From positions 280,245 to 344,244 of the IMG/VR virus record IMGVR_UViG_3300019776_000324: a stretch of 64,000 nt of DNA; one strand, given 5' to 3'. Below the pieces are notes generated by a model that made no database searches, was not told the DNA's origin, and was given only the letters and a program-made list of their open reading frames with translations. Positions 38,923-60,440 of this stretch are shown in pieces (the stretch's first letter is position 1; each line of letters starts with the position of its first letter). Made by a program: the position numbers and the translations under genes.

Positions 38923-39210
38923 ATGAGTAGACCTAAACCAACGGTACTTGCCGAGCTCACTAACAAATCCACATACAAAACTGAACAAGTATTAGCGTCA
39001 GAAGGTATTTGGGCAGTGTTCTATGACAGCAAACCAATCAACCTTAAAACCTCTAATTTATTAGTTCAGTATCCTGGACCAAAATATAAAAAGGTTAGTT
39101 TCTCTAATCCAGGGCATGCTAAGAATTTAGCTAAAAAACTTAATACACAATTCAAGACTGACAAGTTTACAGTTGTGTTATTGAATGCCGGCGATCGAGT
39201 CTATCCTTGA
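38923..39210 (+). CDS. Hypothetical basic protein
   Basis: Follows a CATAAATA late motif. Confidence 0.6.
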   Translation: MSRPKPTVLAELTNKSTYKTEQVLASEGIWAVFYDSKPINLKTSNLLVQYPGPKYKKVSFSNPGHAKNLAKKLNTQFKTDKFTVVLLNAGDRVYP

Positions 39211-39818: not shown

Positions 39819-40817
39819 ATGTCTAAACGCACAGTAAAATGGCTTATCGCGCATCAACCAGAAGAGTTGTTTGTTCGTACAGCTACAGCCTTCTCACAAG
39901 AATTAAACAAACTTATTGGAGATGAGCTTGAGATTGAAATTTTAACTTATCCTAGTTACGCCGCAAAATACGGCGAAATCAAAGATCTAGAAAAATTGGC
40001 TTATTTTGATGAGCCAGAATACACTAATCACACAGCCGAAGGTAGTCTATGGGCCAAAGGCATTGATGCTTTTTGGAACGCTATGACAACCGGCGAGATC
40101 GAAATGAGCCAAATGCAAGTTGGACAGATCAGCAAATTTAACTATGACTTTGCTGCTTTAGATTTGCCATTCTTATTTGACGACCACGAGCATGTTAGCC
40201 GTGTTGTTGATGGAGAAATTGGTGCTGAACTTTGCCGTCAATTAGGCGAAAAGAGTTCTATCAAAGGCCTAGCATTTACATACTCAGGTGGATATCGTGT
40301 TATTGGTAGTAACGAATCTATCTGCTCATTAGAAGAGTTAGAAGGTCGTAAAGTTATTATTGAACAACCATTGAGTCTTGGTTATGCAATTGAAAAAATT
40401 GGAGCTGAAACTGTAGAGTTGGCACCAAACTTATGGCGTAAACTAGATCCAGTTGGCAATGGCCAAGCTGACGCAGTTGAAACTACCTATTTGCGTTTTA
40501 ATGGTAGCCATGTTCTCAAGACAAACCACAGCGTGTTTATGACTACTATTGTTGTAAGTAACCAGTTCTGGAATACATTGACAGAAGTACAACAAGCTGC
40601 ATTCCAAGCTGCTGCTCGTGTTGCTAGTCAAACTGAAAGACAGTGGGCATTGGATGATGCAGATCGTTATGAAGCTGAAGCTCAAGCTAAAGGTATTACT
40701 ATTACTGACATCAGTGAACAAGATGCTGCTCGTTTAAAGAAAGCTAGTCAACAAACTTATCTTCGCGTAAACGATATGTTTAGCAAGGGCTTGTTGGGTC
40801 GTATTCGTAAAGCCTAA
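39819..40817 (+). CDS. TRAP transporter solute-binding protein (DctP-like)
   Basis: DLPFLFDD.EH; G.R.I; LEGRK; H; VS..FW..L...QQ; no obvious signal peptide. Confidence 0.75.
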   Translation: MSKRTVKWLIAHQPEELFVRTATAFSQELNKLIGDELEIEILTYPSYAAKYGEIKDLEKLAYFDEPEYTNHTAEGSLWAKGIDAFWNAMTTGEIEMSQMQVGQISKFNYDFAALDLPFLFDDHEHVSRVVDGEIGAELCRQLGEKSSIKGLAFTYSGGYRVIGSNESICSLEELEGRKVIIEQPLSLGYAIEKIGAETVELAPNLWRKLDPVGNGQADAVETTYLRFNGSHVLKTNHSVFMTTIVVSNQFWNTLTEVQQAAFQAAARVASQTERQWALDDADRYEAEAQAKGITITDISEQDAARLKKASQQTYLRVNDMFSKGLLGRIRKA

Positions 40818-41974
40818 GGTTCTAAACAGTAAGCATTAACGGCCCCGAGTACCCCTCGGGACCAATCATTATTATTATTCAACCAGCCAAGTTTAGCGTA
40901 TCGTGAATATACTTCAGTTACACCATTCTTGGCATTCTTCAAATTAACATCATCACCTGGTGTCTTTTTCCAAAACCAATCATCTCGTTCACTTAGCATT
41001 AAATTAATTGGTTTGGCTGCTACCAAGGTTGATGGGTTCCATCCAGGATAAATGGTTGTGTGATAGATATCATTGTTAAGATATCTTCCATGTGTTTTAC
41101 TTTTCACAGCATGACTATATTGTTTCTGATCTGTGAACCAGGGTTGATCAGCAGTACCTTTTAGTTTGTTCATCAATAGATGACATTGTTTGATTATTAT
41201 TTGTGCAGAGTCCGGGCCCCAGAAGAACCATTCATCGTAGTAACCTTGATTGGCCAGCTCTTGAATACGAATATTTGTTTCACTGAATGCGTCAATTAGA
41301 TATGTGTGATATTTGCCGTCTTTGTCAAATATGCGTGGCTTGTCTGTACCCCAGATAAAACATAATTTTTTACCAGCATTGATAAGGTCTTGGTAATCTT
41401 GAATGTAGTCGCGCATGTATGCTCGAGCAAAACTGTTGGCACTTGCAATACCTTTAATGTTGTAAATAAAATCAAATTTAACATCGGGTCGTAAATATAC
41501 CTTAGGAATGATGTCGCTAAGATCTACTGTACGATGTTTTATATGTGGATGTTGTTCTAGAATTTTTTTAGTTTCAGGAACAGCAGTGAAGAATATTTCT
41601 TCATTCATGTTGTTGTGTTTGTCGCCATCGGCACCGTAAGAGTGGAATTGAGCAATTTCATCAACTTTAATGTTGTTATCGATAAAACTATCAAGTACGC
41701 ACCACGAGTCTGGACCGCCTGAATACCAAACAACAATGTAATCATAGTTGTCTCGTATTTGTTGTGCTCGTTGGCGATATAGTTCTTTTAAATTGGCACT
41801 GGGTTCTTGAGTCCAATTGTGTGATTGGTATTGTGGTTGATTAAAGTGCCACTCTAATTGTATGCCAGTACGATGCATTTCTTCTACAGCAAGCAATTTA
41901 CTGTAGGTTTTGAAAGTAGGACCAACGGTGTAATAGCCAAATTGGTCCCCAGAGTAGGGAGTAGTAGTAATCAT
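40814..41974 (-). CDS. PP-loop (adenine nucleotide alpha-hydrolase-like) protein
   Basis: VWYSGGPDS; likely start MITTTPY at 41974. Confidence 0.55.
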   Translation of the reverse strand: MITTTPYSGDQFGYYTVGPTFKTYSKLLAVEEMHRTGIQLEWHFNQPQYQSHNWTQEPSANLKELYRQRAQQIRDNYDYIVVWYSGGPDSWCVLDSFIDNNIKVDEIAQFHSYGADGDKHNNMNEEIFFTAVPETKKILEQHPHIKHRTVDLSDIIPKVYLRPDVKFDFIYNIKGIASANSFARAYMRDYIQDYQDLINAGKKLCFIWGTDKPRIFDKDGKYHTYLIDAFSETNIRIQELANQGYYDEWFFWGPDSAQIIIKQCHLLMNKLKGTADQPWFTDQKQYSHAVKSKTHGRYLNNDIYHTTIYPGWNPSTLVAAKPINLMLSERDDWFWKKTPGDDVNLKNAKNGVTEVYSRYAKLGWLNNNNDWSRGVLGAVNAYCLEP

Positions 41975-42080
41975 GTATGTGTAGTGAAATGGAAAATATT
42001 GTTTATAAAAGTATTGTAACACAGATAGTTTTATAGTACAATAGTGAAAGTAATATTTATTAACCAAGGAAAAACAACTT

Positions 42081-42971
42081 ATGAAACGAGTATTAATAGC
42101 GTTAGGCATTGTCCTAGCTTCTAACACAGTATCAGCCGATACTATTAAAATTACATGGCCATTTGGTCCTGATGTGGCTAGTCAACCCATGCGACTCATG
42201 GCTGATCAAGCCAACAAGCTACAAAAAAATGATACCTATGTTTTAGAATTTAAAACTGGGGCCGCAGGAGTCGTAGCCGTAAATGCAGTATCAAGCGATA
42301 AAAACGATGCAATCTTGGCACATTCTGGATCATTCTTTATTGTACCAGAAGCAATCGATCCTCCTGGATACAATGTTAACGACTGGCAGATGATTGATGC
42401 ATTATGCGATCTTCCGTTTGTTATTGCTAGTAAAAAGTACAAGTCTTTCAAAGACATTCCTCGTAACGAGATCGTAAGTATTGGCCACGCTGGTAATGGC
42501 ACAACTACGCATCTAATTGCTGAAGCAATAAGAAAAAAATATCCTAACTTGTTACTTGTTCCTTACAAGTCAGTTAGTGCTGCAGGGCTTGATTTAATGG
42601 GCGGACATGTTGACCTTATCGTAAGTTTACCAGGCGACACATTCACACACGAAAAAGATGGCAAGATGACTGTACTAGCAGTTACAGGAACAAACAAAGT
42701 CAATGGCGTTCCTAGCTTGGGCAGTCTAGGCGTACCGGCAGGCGATCAACTGATCACTGGATATTTCTATTTTGCTTCAAAGTCAGCTAACGAACAAAAA
42801 GTTAAGAACTGGATGAATGTACTTGGCCAAACCAAGACCAAAGAAGTAACCGACTTAATGAATCAAAATTATTGCAAGCCTTCAACACTAAAGCCAAGTC
42901 AATATGATGCAAGATTCAATGAATTGCGTGACTTCTGGAAGAAGGAAGTTTCTGCCATCAAGCCAAAATAA
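42081..42971 (+). CDS. Bug/TctC tripartite tricarboxylate transporter solute-binding protein
   Basis: Signal peptide; PF.P; GAAG; S.GHAG.G...HL; VPYK; DLMGGHVD. Confidence 0.8.
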   Translation: MKRVLIALGIVLASNTVSADTIKITWPFGPDVASQPMRLMADQANKLQKNDTYVLEFKTGAAGVVAVNAVSSDKNDAILAHSGSFFIVPEAIDPPGYNVNDWQMIDALCDLPFVIASKKYKSFKDIPRNEIVSIGHAGNGTTTHLIAEAIRKKYPNLLLVPYKSVSAAGLDLMGGHVDLIVSLPGDTFTHEKDGKMTVLAVTGTNKVNGVPSLGSLGVPAGDQLITGYFYFASKSANEQKVKNWMNVLGQTKTKEVTDLMNQNYCKPSTLKPSQYDARFNELRDFWKKEVSAIKPK

Positions 42972-42987
42972 CTTATAAGTAATTATA

Positions 42988-43340
42988 GTTTCGCATTTTA
43001 GTAAAAATGCGTGGTGGGTCGGGCTTTAAAGAATTGTTGTAATTCCTTCGTAGGGAAGGCGCTGTGGACCCGGGTTCGATACCCGGCATCTCCACCGAAA
43101 GGTATTAGGTTAGTATTTTTCGGTGGGGATGAAATGGATTCGACATGGTGAGATACTGAAAGAGGCAACACGGTAGGCGATGACCGTAAATCAAGCAAAT
43201 CTCGTAAATGCAAAAGCATCTACAGGCGAAGTAACTGTTTCAGGCAAGAGCGTTAAGTTCTCTGCTCGTACAGCGAAAGCTTCTTTAGCAGTTTAATCAC
43301 TGCTTAGGGTAGGAAATACCTCGTAACAGAAACAACCTAA
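42988..43340 (+). ncRNA. ssrA: Circularly permuted (two-piece) tmRNA; tag AKASTGEVTVSGKSVKFSARTAKASLAV* at 43210-43296
   Basis: T-arm and CAUCUCCA (43070-43094) lie before the 5' end GGGGAUG (43125); acceptor stem with G3-U70; GGAUUCGAC; UAAAU-GCA resume context. Confidence 0.88.
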
Positions 43341-43366
43341 AACGGCACTTAATTGTGCCGTTTTTC
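43339..43366 (+). terminator. Intrinsic terminator after tmRNA
   Basis: AAAACGGCAC-TTAATT-GTGCCGTTTTT. Confidence 0.8.
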
Positions 43367-43411
43367 TTGACAAAAACATTTTATAGTATATACTTAGACA
43401 GTATAAATAAT
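43367..43411 (+). promoter_or_regulatory. sigma70 promoter followed by a TATAAATA late promoter
   Basis: TTGACA-16-TATACT; TATAAATA at about 43403. Confidence 0.5.
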
Positions 43412-43602
43412 ATCTAGCAACGCCAGCGGAGTTCTAGCTGACGTCGGTTTCTTAGGACGCTTTGGGTTCCCCCATTTATCAGTTTACTGTAACGCCCTTC
43501 CGTGTGTGAATCCTTCACTAGCATATTTTTTACGCATACAGTTTACTTCACTAAGTAGTTTACTGTATTATGTCACAATTTTTATATAAGGAAAAATCAA
43601 GC

Positions 43603-44772
43603 ATGAAAAAGCTATTATTAGCATTAACCGCAGTACTGGGAGTGAGTGTTGCTCATGCCCAATCTAGCGTTACCATTTACGGTCTATTAGATGTAGGCTA
43701 TATTGGTACTAGCTACAAAGGTGTTGGAACTTCAGCAACCAATAAACAAACTACTAACACATTTGGCCAGAGTGCTGAAAGTCCAAGTCGTTTAGGTTTT
43801 AAAGGTAGTGAAGATTTAGGTGGCGGCAAGTCTGCTTTCTTTACAATTGAAACAGGTTTAACTCCGTCCAACTCAACAGCATCAACTTGGAACAACCGTC
43901 AAAGTTTTGTCGGTCTTAAACAAAATGGCCTCGGCGAAGCTGCTATCGGTACTCAGTATACTCCAATTTTTAGTGCTGTAGCTAGAACAGGTGCTAACCA
44001 AGCAAACGACCTAGTAGGCGATGTAATCATGGGTGGTAATCCTCAGTTGTTCGGCAACAATGGATCTGGAACTTATGGTACTACTGCTTCTGCTAACGGT
44101 ACAGATTCTGGTTTCACTGTTCGTACATCAAACACTTTAACTGTTAAATCCGAAGACTTCAAAGGATTTGTAGGTAAAGGTTTTGTAGCAATGAACAACC
44201 AAAATACTACACAAACTAACTCAACCACAGGTGGCACAAATAATGCGTCCGGTTGGGGCTTAGGTGTTGATTACACTTGGAACAAGTTGTTAGTAACAGC
44301 AAACTACCAAGCATTGAAGAGCTTGCAAACAGCTGCTACTCCTACTAACCCTGCTCCAGCTTACTGGAACACTGCTAGTGGTGGTACAAACACACAAGAC
44401 AATCAAACATACATCGGTGGTGTATATGACTTTGGTATCTTGAAGGGCTATGCTCAGTATATCAACCGTAAAGCAACTGATACATTGAACACTGGCTACT
44501 TTGCTCAGCGCCGTGCTGAACAGATTGGTGTTCGTGGATTCTTTACTCCAACTATCGAAGGTTGGGCAAGTGCTGGTGTTGGTAAAGTAACAGCATTCGG
44601 TGCTGGTCAACCAACAGCTAACTTCACTGGCTATCAGTTAGGTTCAAACTACTGGTTAAGCAAGCGTACAAACTTGTATGCTATGTACGGTCAGACACAA
44701 ACTGCAAGCACTTCTGCTGCTCCAGCGTTAGCTGCTAGCAACTATGCAGTAGGTCTTCGTCACACATTCTAA
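43603..44772 (+). CDS. Gram-negative trimeric porin (betaproteobacterial type)
   Basis: Signal peptide; SSVTIYGLLD; SRLGFKGSEDLG; WNNRQSFVGL; LSKRTNLY; C-terminal GLRHTF. Confidence 0.92.
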   Translation: MKKLLLALTAVLGVSVAHAQSSVTIYGLLDVGYIGTSYKGVGTSATNKQTTNTFGQSAESPSRLGFKGSEDLGGGKSAFFTIETGLTPSNSTASTWNNRQSFVGLKQNGLGEAAIGTQYTPIFSAVARTGANQANDLVGDVIMGGNPQLFGNNGSGTYGTTASANGTDSGFTVRTSNTLTVKSEDFKGFVGKGFVAMNNQNTTQTNSTTGGTNNASGWGLGVDYTWNKLLVTANYQALKSLQTAATPTNPAPAYWNTASGGTNTQDNQTYIGGVYDFGILKGYAQYINRKATDTLNTGYFAQRRAEQIGVRGFFTPTIEGWASAGVGKVTAFGAGQPTANFTGYQLGSNYWLSKRTNLYAMYGQTQTASTSAAPALAASNYAVGLRHTF

Positions 44773-44788
44773 TTTTAAATTAGAGTTC

Positions 44789-44813
44789 AACAAAAGGGCT
44801 TAGGCCCTTTTGT
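44789..44813 (+). terminator. Intrinsic terminator
   Basis: AAAAGGGC-TTAG-GCCCTTTT. Confidence 0.75.
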
Positions 44814-44830
44814 GTTTTAAGGATATTAAA

Positions 44831-45394
44831 TTGAAAAAATTATTAATTATTTTATTAGCAACTATGTCATCTGCGGTGTTTGCTAGCGATAACTGGCAAA
44901 GCGGCGATGGCCAGTTGCAATGGCGTAACGGAGATGGTACACTATGTTGGCGTGATGCTAATTGGACACCAGCTACTGCCGCTAAAGGTTGTGATGGCGC
45001 ATTAGTTGCTTCTCCAGCAAAACCTTCAGTATCACAAAGCAAAATCACTTTGCAAGCTGACACACTTTATGACTTCAACAAGTCTGACTTGAAACCAGAA
45101 GGTAAAGCTACATTGGACAAGATTGCCAAAGAGTTGAGTAAAATCAAATTGGAAGTAATCGTTGCCGTTGGTAATACTGACAGCATTGGTACTGATGCTT
45201 ACAATATGGCTTTGGGTCAGCGTCGTGCGCAGTCTGTTAAGACCTACTTGGTAAGCAAGGGTGTTGACGGTAGCCGCATCTACACAGAATCAAAAGGCAA
45301 ATCTAATCCTGTAGCGTCTAACGCTACAGCAGATGGTCGTGCCCAGAATCGTCGTACCGACATTGAAGTTGTTGGCATGGTTGATTCTAAGTAA
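44831..45394 (+). CDS. ompA: OmpA family peptidoglycan-binding protein (TTG start)
   Basis: CWRD..WTP..A..GCD; FDF/YDFNKS; GNTDSIG; N..L.QRRA; NRR.DIEV. Confidence 0.9.
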   Translation: MKKLLIILLATMSSAVFASDNWQSGDGQLQWRNGDGTLCWRDANWTPATAAKGCDGALVASPAKPSVSQSKITLQADTLYDFNKSDLKPEGKATLDKIAKELSKIKLEVIVAVGNTDSIGTDAYNMALGQRRAQSVKTYLVSKGVDGSRIYTESKGKSNPVASNATADGRAQNRRTDIEVVGMVDSK

Positions 45395-45409
45395 TTGAAC
45401 AACACGCAT

Positions 45410-45435
45410 AAAAAGCTCCTGCGGGGGCTTTTTTT
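45410..45435 (+). terminator. Intrinsic terminator
   Basis: AAAAAGCTCC-TGCG-GGGGCTTTTTTT. Confidence 0.75.
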
Positions 45436-45449
45436 GTGGTAAGTAAATC

Positions 45450-46262
45450 ATGACAGATATTATCACTGTAGCATTTCGAGAAGAACTTCCGGTATTAAAA
45501 TTACAAGCAAAAAGTATAGAACTTTATTGTCAAGACTTGGATATTGGCAACATCATTGTTGTTGTCAATGATGACAACTTGGATCCGTCCGAACTTGATC
45601 GTAGTTGGTGGGGTCAACTCAGTGACCGAGTTGTATTTGTTCATCGCAGAGCATGGAATATTGACTACGCAGAAAATGGATGGTTAACTCAACAACTATT
45701 AAAAATTTTAGCCACCGGTATGGGCAAAGGTGAATGGTCAATTGTACTTGATGCTAAAACAATATTTGTTCGTCCAGTAAAAAACCTTGCTCAACGGCCT
45801 GTTGTTGGTGATTTACAAATAGATTCTGTGTTTGGCCCTAGCCGACAAATAGTTAATAATCTGTTTAACATTGACTTACAAAGACAGTTAGGCCCGGGTG
45901 GTGTACCATTCATATTTAACAATCAACTAGTTCAAGAGATGATCAGTGAAGTTGAAAAACTAACTAACTGTTCTTCGTTTAGTAAGTGGTTTCAAGATCA
46001 AGGAATGATTACAGAATTTATTTTATACTCTGGATATGTAGTGTATAAATTTGGATCATATAATACCATGTACAATACTGATACTTCAATTGAGATTAGT
46101 CCGTGTAACTTATGTCATAGTGAAGTTGCTATCTTTGATCGTAAATTTGCAGAGATGGCTGATACACATACAGTCAGTGTACATAGACGAGCATGGAGTC
46201 AACTAAGCAACGAACAACAGTCCAAATATACAAATTTTTTAAAAAGCAGAGGTATTGAGTGA
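45450..46262 (+). CDS. Putative nucleotide-sugar transferase-like protein (DUF6492-like)
   Basis: GW..QQL.K; VLDAKT.F; TEF.LY. Confidence 0.45.
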   Translation: MTDIITVAFREELPVLKLQAKSIELYCQDLDIGNIIVVVNDDNLDPSELDRSWWGQLSDRVVFVHRRAWNIDYAENGWLTQQLLKILATGMGKGEWSIVLDAKTIFVRPVKNLAQRPVVGDLQIDSVFGPSRQIVNNLFNIDLQRQLGPGGVPFIFNNQLVQEMISEVEKLTNCSSFSKWFQDQGMITEFILYSGYVVYKFGSYNTMYNTDTSIEISPCNLCHSEVAIFDRKFAEMADTHTVSVHRRAWSQLSNEQQSKYTNFLKSRGIE

Positions 46263-46792
46263 AGGCTATGGCTCTAGTTGCTCACCCTGACGATTGTGTT
46301 ATCTTTGCATATAGTTTCATGCATCATTATAAACACTTGGACTGGACAGTATGCTATCTTACACACACTGCTGAAGATGCTAGAGGGAACGAATTTGCTA
46401 ATTTTTGGAGCAAGAGAAACATCTCTACTAAATTTTTAGGATTCAACGATGATTGGAATTATGTCAAGGAAGGTCAACTAGGGTTTGATCCTGTTGATGC
46501 TGAACAGGCAATTAAAGATGCAATACTTGGACAAGATTTAATTTTAACACACGATCATAACGGCGATTATGGTCATATACATCATAAATTTATACACCAA
46601 GTAGTCTGCAATAATCATACACACACGGTATGTTTTGCAGGGCGTGGTCAAGGAAATGTTAAGTATAGTATAGACGCAAGTGTATATGATCTTAATGAAT
46701 TCCCATTGCATCAAGATGTTGTTTCTAGTTTTCATCAACAACAACATTCAAATGAATATACTGTATCTGTGAGAGTAGAAAATATATTATGA
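46259..46792 (+). CDS. PIG-L/LmbE family deacetylase
   Basis: AHPDD; THD..GDYGH.HH. Confidence 0.75.
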   Translation: MKAMALVAHPDDCVIFAYSFMHHYKHLDWTVCYLTHTAEDARGNEFANFWSKRNISTKFLGFNDDWNYVKEGQLGFDPVDAEQAIKDAILGQDLILTHDHNGDYGHIHHKFIHQVVCNNHTHTVCFAGRGQGNVKYSIDASVYDLNEFPLHQDVVSSFHQQQHSNEYTVSVRVENIL

Positions 46793-50017: not shown

Positions 50018-50101
50018 GGAGTGGAAGCATCAATGGTGATGCACTGGACTGTAAATCCGGCGCCTACGGCACGACTGGTTCGATCCCAGTACACTCCACC
50101 A
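50018..50101 (+). tRNA. tRNA-Tyr(GTA)
   Basis: Cloverleaf with long variable arm; CCA. Confidence 0.9.
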
Positions 50102-60347: not shown

Positions 60348-60440
60348 GGAGGGCTGGCCGAGCGGTCGAAGGCACCCGCCTACTAAGCGGGCATGGGTCT
60401 TAACAACTCATCTGGGGTTCGAATCCCTAGCCCTCCGCCA
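60348..60440 (+). tRNA. tRNA-Ser body with ACT anticodon
   Basis: CCCGC-CU-ACU-AA-GCGGG; long variable arm; G73; CCA. Confidence 0.85.

What the first reader, a model, noticed from the sequence alone, without database searches (positions are those of the whole stretch)
42974..43366. Phage-encoded circularly permuted tmRNA with a 28-residue non-canonical tag
Seen: the acceptor piece (T-arm, CAUCUCCA) precedes an intervening segment whose ends pair (ACCGAAA/UUUCGGU), followed by the coding piece starting GGGGAUG. It has G3-U70, inter-piece helices CAUGGUG/CGCUGUG and GCAACA/UGUUGU, its own TATAAGTA late promoter and a terminator. The tag is AKASTGEVTVSGKSVKFSARTAKASLAV. Known: two-piece tmRNAs occur in alphaproteobacteria and a few cyanobacterial and betaproteobacterial lineages, and typical tags are about 10 aa ending in LAA. 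Inference: the phage supplies ribosome rescue with a tag that may change or avoid ClpXP/SspB degradation. No smpB is seen, so it would use the host's.
Basis: partly seen in the sequence, partly recalled or inferred. Interest (0 to 1): 0.85.

Follow-up and report, generated by a model that had tools for sequence, protein, structure and literature searches.

The report
Jumbo-phage two-piece tmRNA, long tag
A giant uncultured phage carries a genuine split (two-piece) ribosome-rescue RNA whose built-in peptide tag is about three times the usual length and lacks the usual degradation ending; phage tmRNAs are already known, but this long-tag lineage, shared by dozens of uncultured phage contigs, appears undescribed.

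Summary
ARAGORN calls a permuted tmRNA at 43005-43387 with exactly the reported 28-residue tag. Two Rfam models score far above threshold: beta_tmRNA 129 bits (threshold 84) and tmRNA_permuted 127.5 bits (threshold 47). The window comes from a 344-kb IMG/VR contig of a Rak2/Atu_ph07-like jumbo phage.

I found about 80 related loci, some of them duplicates, with 41 distinct tags of 22-34 residues, all starting A(K/N/T)AST. Across them the acceptor stem, T-arm and inter-piece helices covary and G3-U is invariant. The tag frame is under purifying selection (pN/pS 0.40, against 1.2-1.4 in the wrong frames).

The closest bacterial tmRNAs (Dechloromonas/Azonexus) share the architecture but carry the 10-residue tag ANDEHFAIAA. 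Most phage relatives keep such an ending after an inserted segment. The window's subgroup has lost it and is basic, ending in AV.

Not supported: the "own TATAAGTA late promoter" (1 match, 3.35 expected; not conserved in relatives). Not new: phage two-piece tmRNAs and huge-phage tmRNAs are already published. No SmpB was found in the window, but 280 kb of the phage was not examined. Function and the fate of the tag remain inferred.

Verdict: a real gene and a new variant of a known kind, of moderate interest.

The parts
42974..42981 (+). I do not count it as a supported part of the gene.
   Evidence: Single occurrence in 64 kb against 3.35 expected. The T4 consensus TATAAATA is not enriched either. 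It is not conserved upstream of relatives.
42992..43011 (+). Leader hairpin (CGCATTTT/AAAATGCG) between the upstream ORF's stop codon and the tmRNA. It has no U-run, and its role is unknown (possibly a processing or stability element).
   Evidence: Folds at -7.3 kcal/mol, z = -3.9, 0 of 200 shuffles as good. Not conserved in relatives.
43034..43096 (+). Acceptor piece. It holds the P2b strand TGTTGT (43035-43040), a local hairpin CCTTC/GAAGG (43045-43059), the P2a strand CGCTGTG (43060-43066), the T-arm (43070-43086), the acceptor 3' strand CATCTCC (43087-43093), discriminator A and CC (43094-43096). The terminal A of CCA is not encoded (the next base is G).
43097..43124 (+). Intervening segment of 28 nt, presumed to be excised. 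Its ends pair and prolong the acceptor stem into a 21-bp hairpin.
   Evidence: All 16 unique relatives form the same kind of hairpin although their segments range from 24 to 156 nt; across the family the range is 24-166 nt.
43125..43209 (+). 5' part of the coding piece. It holds the acceptor 5' strand GGGGATG (G3 pairs with U), the P2a strand CATGGTG (43144-43150), the P2b strand GCAACA (43165-43170), the PK1-region hairpin CGGT/ACCG (43171-43186) and the conserved GTAAAT just before the resume codon.
   Evidence: The alignment to Dechloromonas tmRNA is colinear up to the resume codon.
43210..43296 (+). Tag reading frame: resume codon GCA, 28 codons (AKASTGEVTVSGKSVKFSARTAKASLAV), stop TAA.
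   Evidence: ARAGORN. The resume codon aligns with the consensus GCc/GCa of both Rfam models. Purifying selection acts on this frame.
43287..43321 (+). Hairpin that places the stop codon in its loop (AGCAG/CTGCT, 43287-43304), followed by a small covarying hairpin (GGGTA/TACCT, 43307-43321).
   Evidence: MFE fold. The 3' hairpin is paired in 74/80 cells, with U-A changing to C-G. The alignment of the stop-codon hairpin across tag groups is poor.
43339..43368 (+). Intrinsic terminator: a 10-bp stem (AAAACGGCAC/GTGCCGTTTT) and a T-rich tail. This is the 3' end of the coding piece.
   Evidence: All 16 unique relatives have a hairpin plus U-run here, built from different stem sequences.

Best explanation
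This is a functional two-piece (circularly permuted) tmRNA gene of the betaproteobacterial type, carried by a roughly 344-kb jumbo myophage as part of its translation-support island (29 tRNAs and RtcB lie 7-15 kb downstream).

Likely mechanism:
1. The gene is transcribed as one precursor. The promoter is unknown, and read-through from the upstream gene is possible.
2. tRNA-processing enzymes cut out the 28-nt hairpin loop, and the CCA-adding enzyme supplies the missing terminal A.
3. The two RNAs stay base-paired through the acceptor stem and helices P2a/P2b.
4. Host AlaRS charges the RNA through the G3-U pair.
5. With SmpB, which is the host's unless the unexamined part of the phage encodes one, it enters stalled ribosomes. 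Translation resumes at GCA (43210) and adds a 28-residue tag.

The tag is selected as a peptide. In this subgroup it has lost the ancestral acidic ...ANDExFALAA degron, is basic (+4) and ends in LAV. Rescued chains are therefore probably handled differently from host-tagged ones: degraded more slowly, or by another route.

Shown here: gene identity, architecture, covariation, conservation of the tag as a peptide, and phage context.
Inferred: expression, processing, charging, the SmpB partner, tagging, and the fate of tagged proteins.
For: - Detection: ARAGORN and two Rfam covariance models far above threshold.
- Structure: covariation in every helix of the tRNA-like domain, with G3-U invariant. 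Of 83 family loci, 74 resolve as two-piece genes with G3-U; 7 are cut by contig ends and 2 were not resolved. The precursor hairpin is conserved despite 24-166-nt intervening segments. A terminator is always present. Precursor fold z = -5.7.
- Tag as a peptide: pN/pS is 0.40 in the tag frame against 1.40 and 1.22 in the wrong frames. Differences by codon position are 167/154/351. A stop occurs in 47 of 47 and 40 of 47 tag sequences in the two other frames. Ser switches between TCN and AGT, and the core S-G-K-x-V-K is kept between subgroups with different codons.
- Homology: colinear with Dechloromonas/Azonexus two-piece tmRNA up to the resume codon.
- Phage context: T4-type DNA polymerase 43-50% identical to Phosso, Atu_ph07, CBB and GAP32; 28 tRNAs plus one tRNA-Tyr, and RtcB; even GC of about 40%; a conserved phage backbone orf95-orf129-tmRNA-orf273 in relatives.
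- Tag fate: most relatives end ...FALAA, while this subgroup ends AV and is basic. AAV/ASV tags are weaker degrons than LAA/LVA in E. coli (PMC9097571), and Val is depleted at the final degron position (PMC10862746).
Against: - There is no expression, processing, aminoacylation or tagging data, and the phage is uncultured.
- No SmpB was found in the window or in about 1 Mb of related loci, so dependence on host SmpB is assumed.
- No supported promoter.
- The terminal A of CCA is not encoded.
- The host is unknown, so the host tag and host proteases cannot be compared directly.
- The pairs used for pN/pS are phylogenetically non-independent.
- Nucleotide conservation of the first five tag codons may reflect an RNA constraint (a weak hairpin around the resume codon) rather than selection on the peptide.
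Confidence: 0.7

Rival explanations
1. The tag is not a degradation signal at all. It is a phage-specific functional module, for example a handle for a phage-encoded adaptor or protease, or a stabilising or sorting peptide, so the phage re-routes trans-translation products instead of simply clearing them.
For: - A conserved 12-20-residue insertion follows A-x-A-S-T in all 41 tags, with an alternating hydrophobic/polar pattern.
- The subgroup containing the window has lost the canonical ending and has switched from acidic to basic.
- The peptide is under purifying selection.
- Tag modules are exchanged between tRNA-like-domain backbones.
Against: - No candidate adaptor or protease was found near the gene. 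orf95 could not be modelled, and orf129 has no structural match.
- The C-terminus is still small and hydrophobic (LAV), which is compatible with a weaker ssrA-like degron.
- Most relatives keep a fully canonical ending, so the insertion coexists with ordinary degradation signals.
Confidence: 0.18
2. The RNA acts mainly as a competitor or decoy. It titrates host SmpB, or displaces host tmRNA, to blunt host trans-translation or host sensing of stalled ribosomes. Tagging would be incidental.
For: - No phage SmpB was found locally.
- There is a precedent: the tRNA-like-domain-only tmRNA of mycobacteriophage DS6A inhibits endogenous tmRNA when expressed in E. coli (PMC4131195, PMC11915505).
Against: - A decoy needs no reading frame, yet the frame is intact in all 79 loci whose tag region is not cut by a contig end, and it is under purifying selection.
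- The resume-codon context and the stop-codon hairpin are retained.
Confidence: 0.07
3. The 'tag' is translated conventionally as a 38-residue small protein from the in-frame AUG at 43180 (inside the PK1-region hairpin loop), and the tmRNA-like features are secondary.
For: An in-frame AUG lies 10 codons upstream of the resume codon in most members, and 11 codons upstream in subgroup B, giving 38-39-codon ORFs in nearly all relatives.
Against: - There is no usable Shine-Dalgarno sequence (AGG lies only 2 nt upstream).
- The AUG overlaps the 3' strand of an invariant hairpin.
- The Dechloromonas homologue has no in-frame AUG.
- All defining tmRNA features are present and covary.
Confidence: 0.03
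4. The gene is not the phage's own: either a bacterial fragment in a chimeric assembly or bin, or a leftover attachment-site fragment of host ssrA.
For: The immediate neighbours look cellular: DctP- and TctC-type binding proteins, a porin and OmpA. Many temperate phages carry ssrA fragments.
Against: - The gene is complete, with both pieces.
- GC content is flat at about 40% across the region, whereas the bacterial homologues are GC-rich.
- The same gene sits in a conserved phage backbone in many independent contigs of 100-344 kb, beside tRNA arrays.
- The conserved P2b-PK1 pattern, which does not constrain the tag, matched only 11 loci among genomes of 185,579 bacterial species, and all 11 carry the short canonical tag.
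Confidence: 0.02

Closest known systems
Betaproteobacterial two-piece tmRNA (Rfam RF01850), e.g. Dechloromonas/Azonexus ssrA
   Same: - Same gene order: acceptor piece, intervening loop, coding piece.
- Same helices, and near-identical sequence from P2b through the PK1-region hairpin to the ..TAAAT-GCN resume context.
- The terminal A of CCA is likewise not encoded.
   Different: - The bacterial tag is 10 residues (ANDEHFAIAA), against 28 basic residues ending in LAV here.
- The phage 3' domain is shorter: a hairpin plus terminator replaces the GC-rich 3' pseudoknot region.
- 45% GC rather than GC-rich.
- Carried by a phage.
Published phage two-piece tmRNAs (Methylophilales phage Melnitz, pelagimyophages, cyanophages; PMC9004378)
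   Same: A complete permuted ssrA carried by T4-related or large myophages from aquatic samples. Its function is unproven. The proposed roles are upkeep of the hijacked translation machinery or selective tagging.
   Different: - Melnitz's tmRNA is alphaproteobacterial-type and is linked to a glutamine riboswitch.
- No long-tag lineage is described there.
- The window's gene has no relative among 50,697 deposited phage records.
One-piece tmRNAs of mycobacteriophage cluster C (Bxz1 etc.) and Bacillus phage G; tmRNA/SmpB in huge phages (PMC4131195, PMC7162821)
   Same: Large phages with many tRNAs also carry a tmRNA. Huge phages were reported to encode tmRNA and sometimes SmpB.
   Different: Those are standard (unpermuted) genes, or were not analysed at the level of the tag. 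No SmpB was found here.
Long Lon-specific ssrA tags of Mycoplasma/Mesoplasma (PMC9097571; the roughly 27-residue length is from my own knowledge of Gur and Sauer 2008)
   Same: A natural precedent that a long, divergent tag goes with a switch of the protease that reads it.
   Different: The sequence is unrelated, the tmRNA is bacterial and one-piece, and nothing here links the tag to Lon.
Engineered ssrA variants ending in AAV/ASV (Andersen 1998, as cited in PMC9097571)
   Same: A C-terminal Val in place of Ala gives a weaker but still active degron in E. coli. The window's tag ends in LAV and its closest relatives end in FAV.
   Different: Those are 11-residue E. coli tags that retain the SspB-binding part. 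Behaviour in the unknown host has not been tested.

Membership tests
Permuted (two-piece) tmRNA, beta type (RF04321 / RF01850) | Score above the curated covariance-model thresholds | tested here: met
   129.2 bits against 84, and 127.5 bits against 47. ARAGORN calls a permuted tmRNA.
Permuted (two-piece) tmRNA, beta type (RF04321 / RF01850) | A 7-bp acceptor stem formed between the 3' end of the upstream piece and the 5' end of the downstream piece, with the G3-U AlaRS identity pair | tested here: met
   CATCTCC pairs with GGGGATG. 112/112 cells are paired across 16 unique sequences, three positions covary and U-G is invariant. 74 of 83 family loci resolve this way.
Permuted (two-piece) tmRNA, beta type (RF04321 / RF01850) | T-arm with a GGTTCGA-type loop | tested here: met
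   CCGGG-TTCGATA-CCCGG. 77/79 cells are paired, with several compensatory changes.
Permuted (two-piece) tmRNA, beta type (RF04321 / RF01850) | Discriminator A plus a 3' CCA | tested here: inconclusive
   ACC is encoded and followed by G (43094-43097), so the last A must be added after transcription. The same holds in Dechloromonas, L076 and L082, while other relatives encode ACCA.
Permuted (two-piece) tmRNA, beta type (RF04321 / RF01850) | Inter-piece helices that hold the two RNAs together (P2a, P2b) | tested here: met
   P2a 102/112 and P2b 96/96 cells paired, with U-A changing to C-G. RNAalifold recovers both helices.
Permuted (two-piece) tmRNA, beta type (RF04321 / RF01850) | An intervening segment whose ends pair, making a precursor processed into two pieces | tested here: met
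   A 21-bp hairpin in the window, and the same design in all 16 unique relatives despite 24-156-nt segments. The processing itself cannot be tested with these tools.
Permuted (two-piece) tmRNA, beta type (RF04321 / RF01850) | An Ala resume codon in a conserved context, and a short open frame ending at a stop codon inside a hairpin | tested here: met
   GCA at 43210 aligns with the model consensus and with the Dechloromonas GCC. The stop TAA lies in the loop of the AGCAG/CTGCT hairpin. The frame is under purifying selection.
Permuted (two-piece) tmRNA, beta type (RF04321 / RF01850) | A tag ending in a canonical hydrophobic degron (x-L/I/V-A-A) | tested here: not met
   The window ends ...ASLAV. 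29 of 41 family tags end in AA, but this subgroup ends in AV. This is typical of the family rather than strictly defining, since natural tags vary.
Permuted (two-piece) tmRNA, beta type (RF04321 / RF01850) | An SmpB partner is available | tested here: inconclusive
   tblastn with E. coli SmpB finds nothing in the window or in about 1 Mb of loci. Pfam gives no SmpB hit for the neighbouring ORFs. 280 kb of the contig and the host were not examined.
Permuted (two-piece) tmRNA, beta type (RF04321 / RF01850) | Alanylation, ribosome entry and tagging of non-stop products | not testable with these tools
   This needs experiments.
T4-type late-promoter-driven gene | A TATAAATA-like late promoter that is recurrent in the genome and conserved upstream of the gene | tested here: not met
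   TATAAGTA 1 match against 3.35 expected, TATAAATA 4 against 5.3 expected. There is no conserved motif upstream in relatives.

The most novel reading that the evidence does not exclude
A clade of jumbo phages has re-engineered trans-translation. An exchangeable tag cassette is inserted after A-x-A-S-T. In the window's subgroup this cassette has lost the ClpXP/SspB-type degron and become basic, and it marks rescued nascent chains for a phage-chosen fate: protection, a different protease or adaptor, or localisation. This would amount to a viral takeover of the host's protein quality-control labelling rather than simple ribosome recycling.
Probability: 0.2. Interest if true: 0.75.

Novelty: new variant of a known kind. 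Interest (0 to 1): 0.5.

Why it matters
What phage-encoded tmRNAs do is essentially untested; the searchable literature only speculates. This lineage offers a natural experiment.

- On nearly the same RNA chassis, tags range from short canonical endings to 22-34-residue peptides.
- One subgroup has dropped the degradation ending.
- Because the tag is selected as a peptide, tagging itself, and not only ribosome release, appears to matter to the phage.

This makes a concrete question testable: do phages change the fate of rescued proteins? The tags could also serve as orthogonal degradation or stability tags. In addition, the relatives show that the excised loop of a permuted tmRNA gene can host small protein-coding genes, which I have not seen described.

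Tried and rejected
1. Close relatives among deposited phages. blastn of the gene gave only a 95-nt, 76% match in an Acinetobacter phage, and megablast of 10 kb gave nothing. No annotated relative could be used.
2. SmpB.
   - tblastn with E. coli SmpB against the window and all loci found nothing.
   - The search for related loci with the same protein returned only E. coli-like genes at prophage borders. This is uninformative for the 344-kb contig.
3. A cryptic SmpB-like neighbour.
   - orf95 (38923-39210) gave a poor AlphaFold model (pLDDT 44) and was not searched further.
   - orf129 gave a good model (pLDDT 82.5), but no PDB match at E <= 0.001 and no SmpB among the hits.
   - Pfam and PHROGs were silent on both, apart from a weak PHROG hit of unknown function for orf129.
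4. The late-promoter motif is not enriched and not conserved.
5. The AGTTTACT repeat downstream of the gene has three clustered copies but is not significantly enriched in the window (7 matches, 3.5 expected; 9 of 100 shuffles reach 7).
6. A hairpin around the resume codon is weak (-6 kcal/mol, z = -2.0), and the Dechloromonas equivalent is not significant. I make no claim about it.
7. The 73-codon antisense ORF at 42998-43219 varies from 33 to 85 codons in relatives, so it is spurious.
8. The tag has no similarity to anything else encoded in the window; it hits only itself.
9. A tree to name a donor lineage. With 152 columns most branches are unsupported. It only shows that the Azonexaceae form their own clade and that tag type does not follow the backbone.
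10. My first helix script picked the wrong motif occurrences for the T-arm, the PK1-region hairpin and H5. This was corrected. The alignment of H5 across tag groups remains poor.

Full report

Yes. Rfam's beta_tmRNA model scores 129.2 bits (gathering score 84) over 42983-43242. The general tmRNA_permuted model scores 127.5 bits (gathering score 47) over 43035-43296.

Reading the sequence gives this layout:
- Acceptor piece 43034-43096, with the T-arm CCGGG/CCCGG and the 3' acceptor strand CATCTCC followed by ACC.
- A 28-nt intervening segment at 43097-43124.
- A coding piece that starts with GGGGATG at 43125.
- Resume codon GCA at 43210, which aligns with the consensus resume codon of both models.
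- Stop TAA at 43294-43296.
- A terminator hairpin at 43339-43364 followed by a T-run.

The third acceptor pair is G-U. The helices CGCTGTG/CATGGTG and TGTTGT/GCAACA are present. The ends of the intervening segment pair, so the precursor carries a perfect 21-bp hairpin. The precursor folds at -115.2 kcal/mol, z = -5.7, and the minimum-energy fold reproduces these helices.

**2. Where is it?**

The window is identical to a stretch of IMG/VR contig IMGVR_UViG_3300019776_000324, which is 344,244 bp long. Evidence that this is a phage:
- A T4-type family-B DNA polymerase is 43-50% identical to those of Sinorhizobium phage Phosso, Agrobacterium phage Atu_ph07, Pectobacterium phage CBB and Cronobacter phage GAP32.
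- The window also holds an exonuclease and RtcB. ARAGORN finds 28 tRNAs at 50-61 kb, and Rfam adds one tRNA-Tyr that ARAGORN missed.
- GC content is flat at about 40%.
- No deposited phage is close at the DNA level.

The immediate neighbours look cellular: DctP- and TctC-type solute-binding proteins upstream, and a porin, OmpA, DUF6492 and a PIG-L-type protein downstream. Synteny explains them. Relatives share a compact backbone of orf95, orf129, a tRNA-Met (seen in several relatives), the tmRNA and orf273. In the window the cellular-type genes are insertions on both sides of the tmRNA.

**3. Relatives and what they show**

Pattern scans of IMG/VR and of JGI/ENA metagenomes recovered 83 loci of one lineage, counting the window. 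Some loci are the same contig held in both collections.

- *Tags.* There are 47 unique tag sequences encoding 41 distinct peptides of 22-34 residues. All begin A-(K/N/T)-A-S-T.
- *Contig size.* Many loci lie on contigs of 100-344 kb.
- *Architecture.* 74 loci resolve as two-piece genes with G3-U; 7 are cut by contig ends and 2 were not resolved.
- *Helices, in 16 unique sequences*:
  - Acceptor stem paired in 112/112 cells, with three covarying positions.
  - T-arm paired in 77/79 cells.
  - P2a paired in 102/112 cells.
  - P2b paired in 96/96 cells, with U-A changing to C-G.
  - Every member ends in a terminator built from a different stem.
- *Independent check.* RNAalifold predicts 35 pairs, 17 of them with compensatory double changes.
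- *Intervening segment.* Its length varies from 24 to 166 nt, and in all 16 folded members it forms a hairpin that continues the acceptor stem.

This is strong evidence for a functional RNA with the standard two-piece design.

**4. The tag is selected as a peptide**

- Within the window's subgroup, variable sites fall 4/3/9 on codon positions 1/2/3, and Ser switches between TCN and AGT.
- Between subgroups A and B, the core S-G-K-x-V-K is kept with different codons.
- Over 77 equal-length pairs across the family, pN/pS is 0.40 in the tag frame, against 1.40 and 1.22 in the two wrong frames. Differences by codon position are 167/154/351.
- The two other frames contain stops in 47/47 and 40/47 tag sequences.
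- The pairs are not phylogenetically independent, but the contrast between frames is clear.

**5. Origin and what is unusual**

A pattern for the P2b-PK1 region, which does not constrain the tag, matched only 11 loci among genomes of 185,579 bacterial and archaeal species. Most are Dechloromonas or Azonexus, with a few unclassified or differently binned MAGs. All of them encode the canonical ten-residue tag ANDEHFAIAA. Two odd ARAGORN outputs were resolved by reading the sequence. The phage gene is colinear with these up to the resume codon and then diverges.

Most phage relatives have an inserted segment of roughly 12-20 residues followed by a canonical ending of the ...ANDExFALAA kind. 29 of the 41 tags end in AA.

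Two subgroups have lost that ending:
- The window's subgroup ends ...AESFAV, or ...ASLAV in the window itself.
- A sister subgroup ends ...REAVMA or ...REAVLA.

Both are basic (net +2 to +5). Tags with a canonical ending are acidic on average, with a mean net charge of -1.4.

Tag type does not follow the tRNA-like-domain backbone:
- L075 carries a subgroup-A tag but groups with members of subgroups C and D (support 99/98).
- L036 carries a long subgroup-B tag but pairs with the short-tag L047 (support 98/99).
- L076 combines a subgroup-B-like backbone with a subgroup-A tag.

The tag region therefore behaves as an exchangeable cassette.

**6. What is not supported**

- *The 'own late promoter'.* TATAAGTA occurs once in 64 kb against 3.35 expected. 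The T4 late consensus TATAAATA occurs 4 times against 5.3 expected. The sigma-70 scan finds nothing on the + strand between 42343 and 43367. Upstream regions of relatives share no motif, and the gene often starts within a few bases of the upstream ORF's stop codon, so co-transcription and processing are at least as likely. The window does have a leader hairpin at 42992-43011 (z = -3.9), of unknown role.
- *'No smpB'.* This holds for the window and for the flanks of relatives. The other 280 kb of the contig could not be examined, because the only route available returned E. coli-like genes. Huge phages are reported to encode SmpB in some cases (PMC7162821).
- *The conserved neighbours.* They give no hint of an SmpB substitute. 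orf95 could not be modelled, and orf129 has a confident model with no structural match.

**7. Mechanism**

The best-supported reading is a working two-piece tmRNA. In outline:
- It is made as one precursor.
- tRNA-processing enzymes cut it at the acceptor-stem junctions.
- The CCA-adding enzyme completes it, because the last A is not encoded.
- AlaRS charges it through G3-U.
- It is used with SmpB to rescue stalled ribosomes during infection.

It sits with the phage's tRNA and RtcB repair set. This fits a role in keeping translation going when mRNAs or tRNAs are damaged, by phage nucleases or by host defence.

Because the tag is conserved as a peptide, tagging itself appears to matter. The subgroup's loss of the acidic canonical ending, together with its terminal Val, suggests slower or differently routed proteolysis. 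E. coli data point the same way: AAV/ASV variants are less destabilising than LAA/LVA (PMC9097571), and Val is depleted while Ala is enriched at the last position of selected degrons (PMC10862746). All of this is inference.

Rival readings are given separately:
- A pure decoy for SmpB.
- Conventional translation from the in-frame AUG at 43180.
- Contamination or an attachment-site remnant.

They are disfavoured by the selected frame, the lack of a ribosome-binding site, and the conserved phage context.

**8. Comparison with what is known, and novelty**

The gene meets every testable defining feature of a beta-type permuted tmRNA except two. The canonical tag ending is not met. The encoded CCA is inconclusive, a state it shares with its bacterial relatives.

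Phage tmRNAs are not new:
- One-piece genes in mycobacteriophages and Bacillus phage G (PMC4131195).
- 79 phage entries in the current tmRNA database (PMC11915505).
- 53 ARAGORN-permuted ones among deposited phages, mostly aquatic (PMC9004378).
- tmRNA and SmpB in huge phages (PMC7162821).

I found no description of a phage lineage with conserved 22-34-residue tags, of the loss of the degron in a subgroup, or of cassette-like exchange of tags. Long tags exist elsewhere: in Mycoplasma and Mesoplasma, and in other phage tmRNAs seen here such as L003 and L016 with 24 residues.

I therefore rate it a new variant of a known kind, with interest about 0.5.

Noticed in passing
Relatives: L195, L201, L233, L194, L206, L225, L242, L061, L065, L060, L213, L220 (intervening segment of the tmRNA gene; coordinates derivable): In members with long intervening segments (89-166 nt), the presumably excised loop carries an ATG ORF of 23-56 codons. 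It starts 7-16 nt after ..CCACC, in most cases behind a Shine-Dalgarno-like AAGGAG/AAGGA/AGAGGA. Several are hydrophobic single-helix peptides, and homologous pairs are conserved (L201/L233, L194/L206, L225/L242). The window's 28-nt loop has none.
   Followed up: partly
L067:4413-4619 (intervening segment): The intervening segment of L067 contains TTGACA-17 nt-TATACT, a near-consensus sigma-70 promoter pointing at the coding piece. In some relatives the two pieces might therefore be transcribed separately.
   Followed up: no
window 39819-42971 and 43570-46792: Cellular-type genes are inserted on both sides of the tmRNA, relative to the backbone shared by relatives. They are DctP-like and TctC-like solute-binding proteins, a Porin_4 porin, an OmpA-domain protein, DUF6492 and a PIG-L-type deacetylase. 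The porin cassette has its own near-consensus sigma-70 promoter (TTGACA-16 nt-TATACT, 43367-43394, 11/12 matches) directly after the tmRNA terminator.
   Followed up: partly
window 38923-39210 (+): orf95 is a small basic protein with no Pfam or PHROGs match. It is 85-91% identical across relatives whose neighbouring genes are only 41-60% identical, and it always lies just upstream of the tmRNA. The AlphaFold model was poor (pLDDT 44), so its function is unknown.
   Followed up: partly
L077:3274-3347; also L066, L069, L071, L073, L081: Several long-tag relatives with canonical tag endings carry a tRNA with a CUA anticodon (amber-suppressor type; ARAGORN labels it tRNA-Pyl). In L077 it directly abuts the tmRNA. 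Suppressor-driven read-through could raise the demand for ribosome rescue. The window has no such tRNA.
   Followed up: no
window 60348-60440 (+); L067:9214-9303: A class-II tRNA-Ser with the unusual anticodon ACU (loop CTACTAA). It is conserved in a relative and occurs alongside a normal tRNA-Ser(GCU).
   Followed up: no
window 50018-50098 (+): A tRNA-Tyr (GUA, long variable arm) found by Rfam at 36.5 bits and missed by ARAGORN. It brings the window's tRNA count to 29.
   Followed up: yes
L076, L075, L068 against L036, L060, L065, L047: The gene is mosaic: the same tag type occurs on different tRNA-like-domain backbones, and the same backbone carries different tags. One backbone is shared between a long-tag member (L036) and a short-tag member (L047, ANDESFRIAA). 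This implies recombination within the gene.
   Followed up: partly
window 43481-43564 (+): Three copies of AGTTTACT lie within 84 nt, in the leader of the porin gene. The motif is not significantly enriched in the window as a whole (7 matches, 3.5 expected). TTTACT-containing repeats also occur in the intervening segments and flanks of relatives (L075, L063).
   Followed up: partly
L080, L082, L060, L061 (ORF ending just upstream of the tmRNA): By eye, the upstream ORF in these relatives ends with a cold-shock-protein-like C-terminus (..QGPKGKQASNI..). This would put a Csp-type gene directly before the tmRNA. It was not checked with a profile search.
   Followed up: no
window 43180-43296 (+): An AUG inside the PK1-region hairpin loop is in frame with the tag, 10 codons upstream (11 in subgroup B despite a 3-nt indel). 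It has no usable ribosome-binding site and is probably coincidental.
   Followed up: partly
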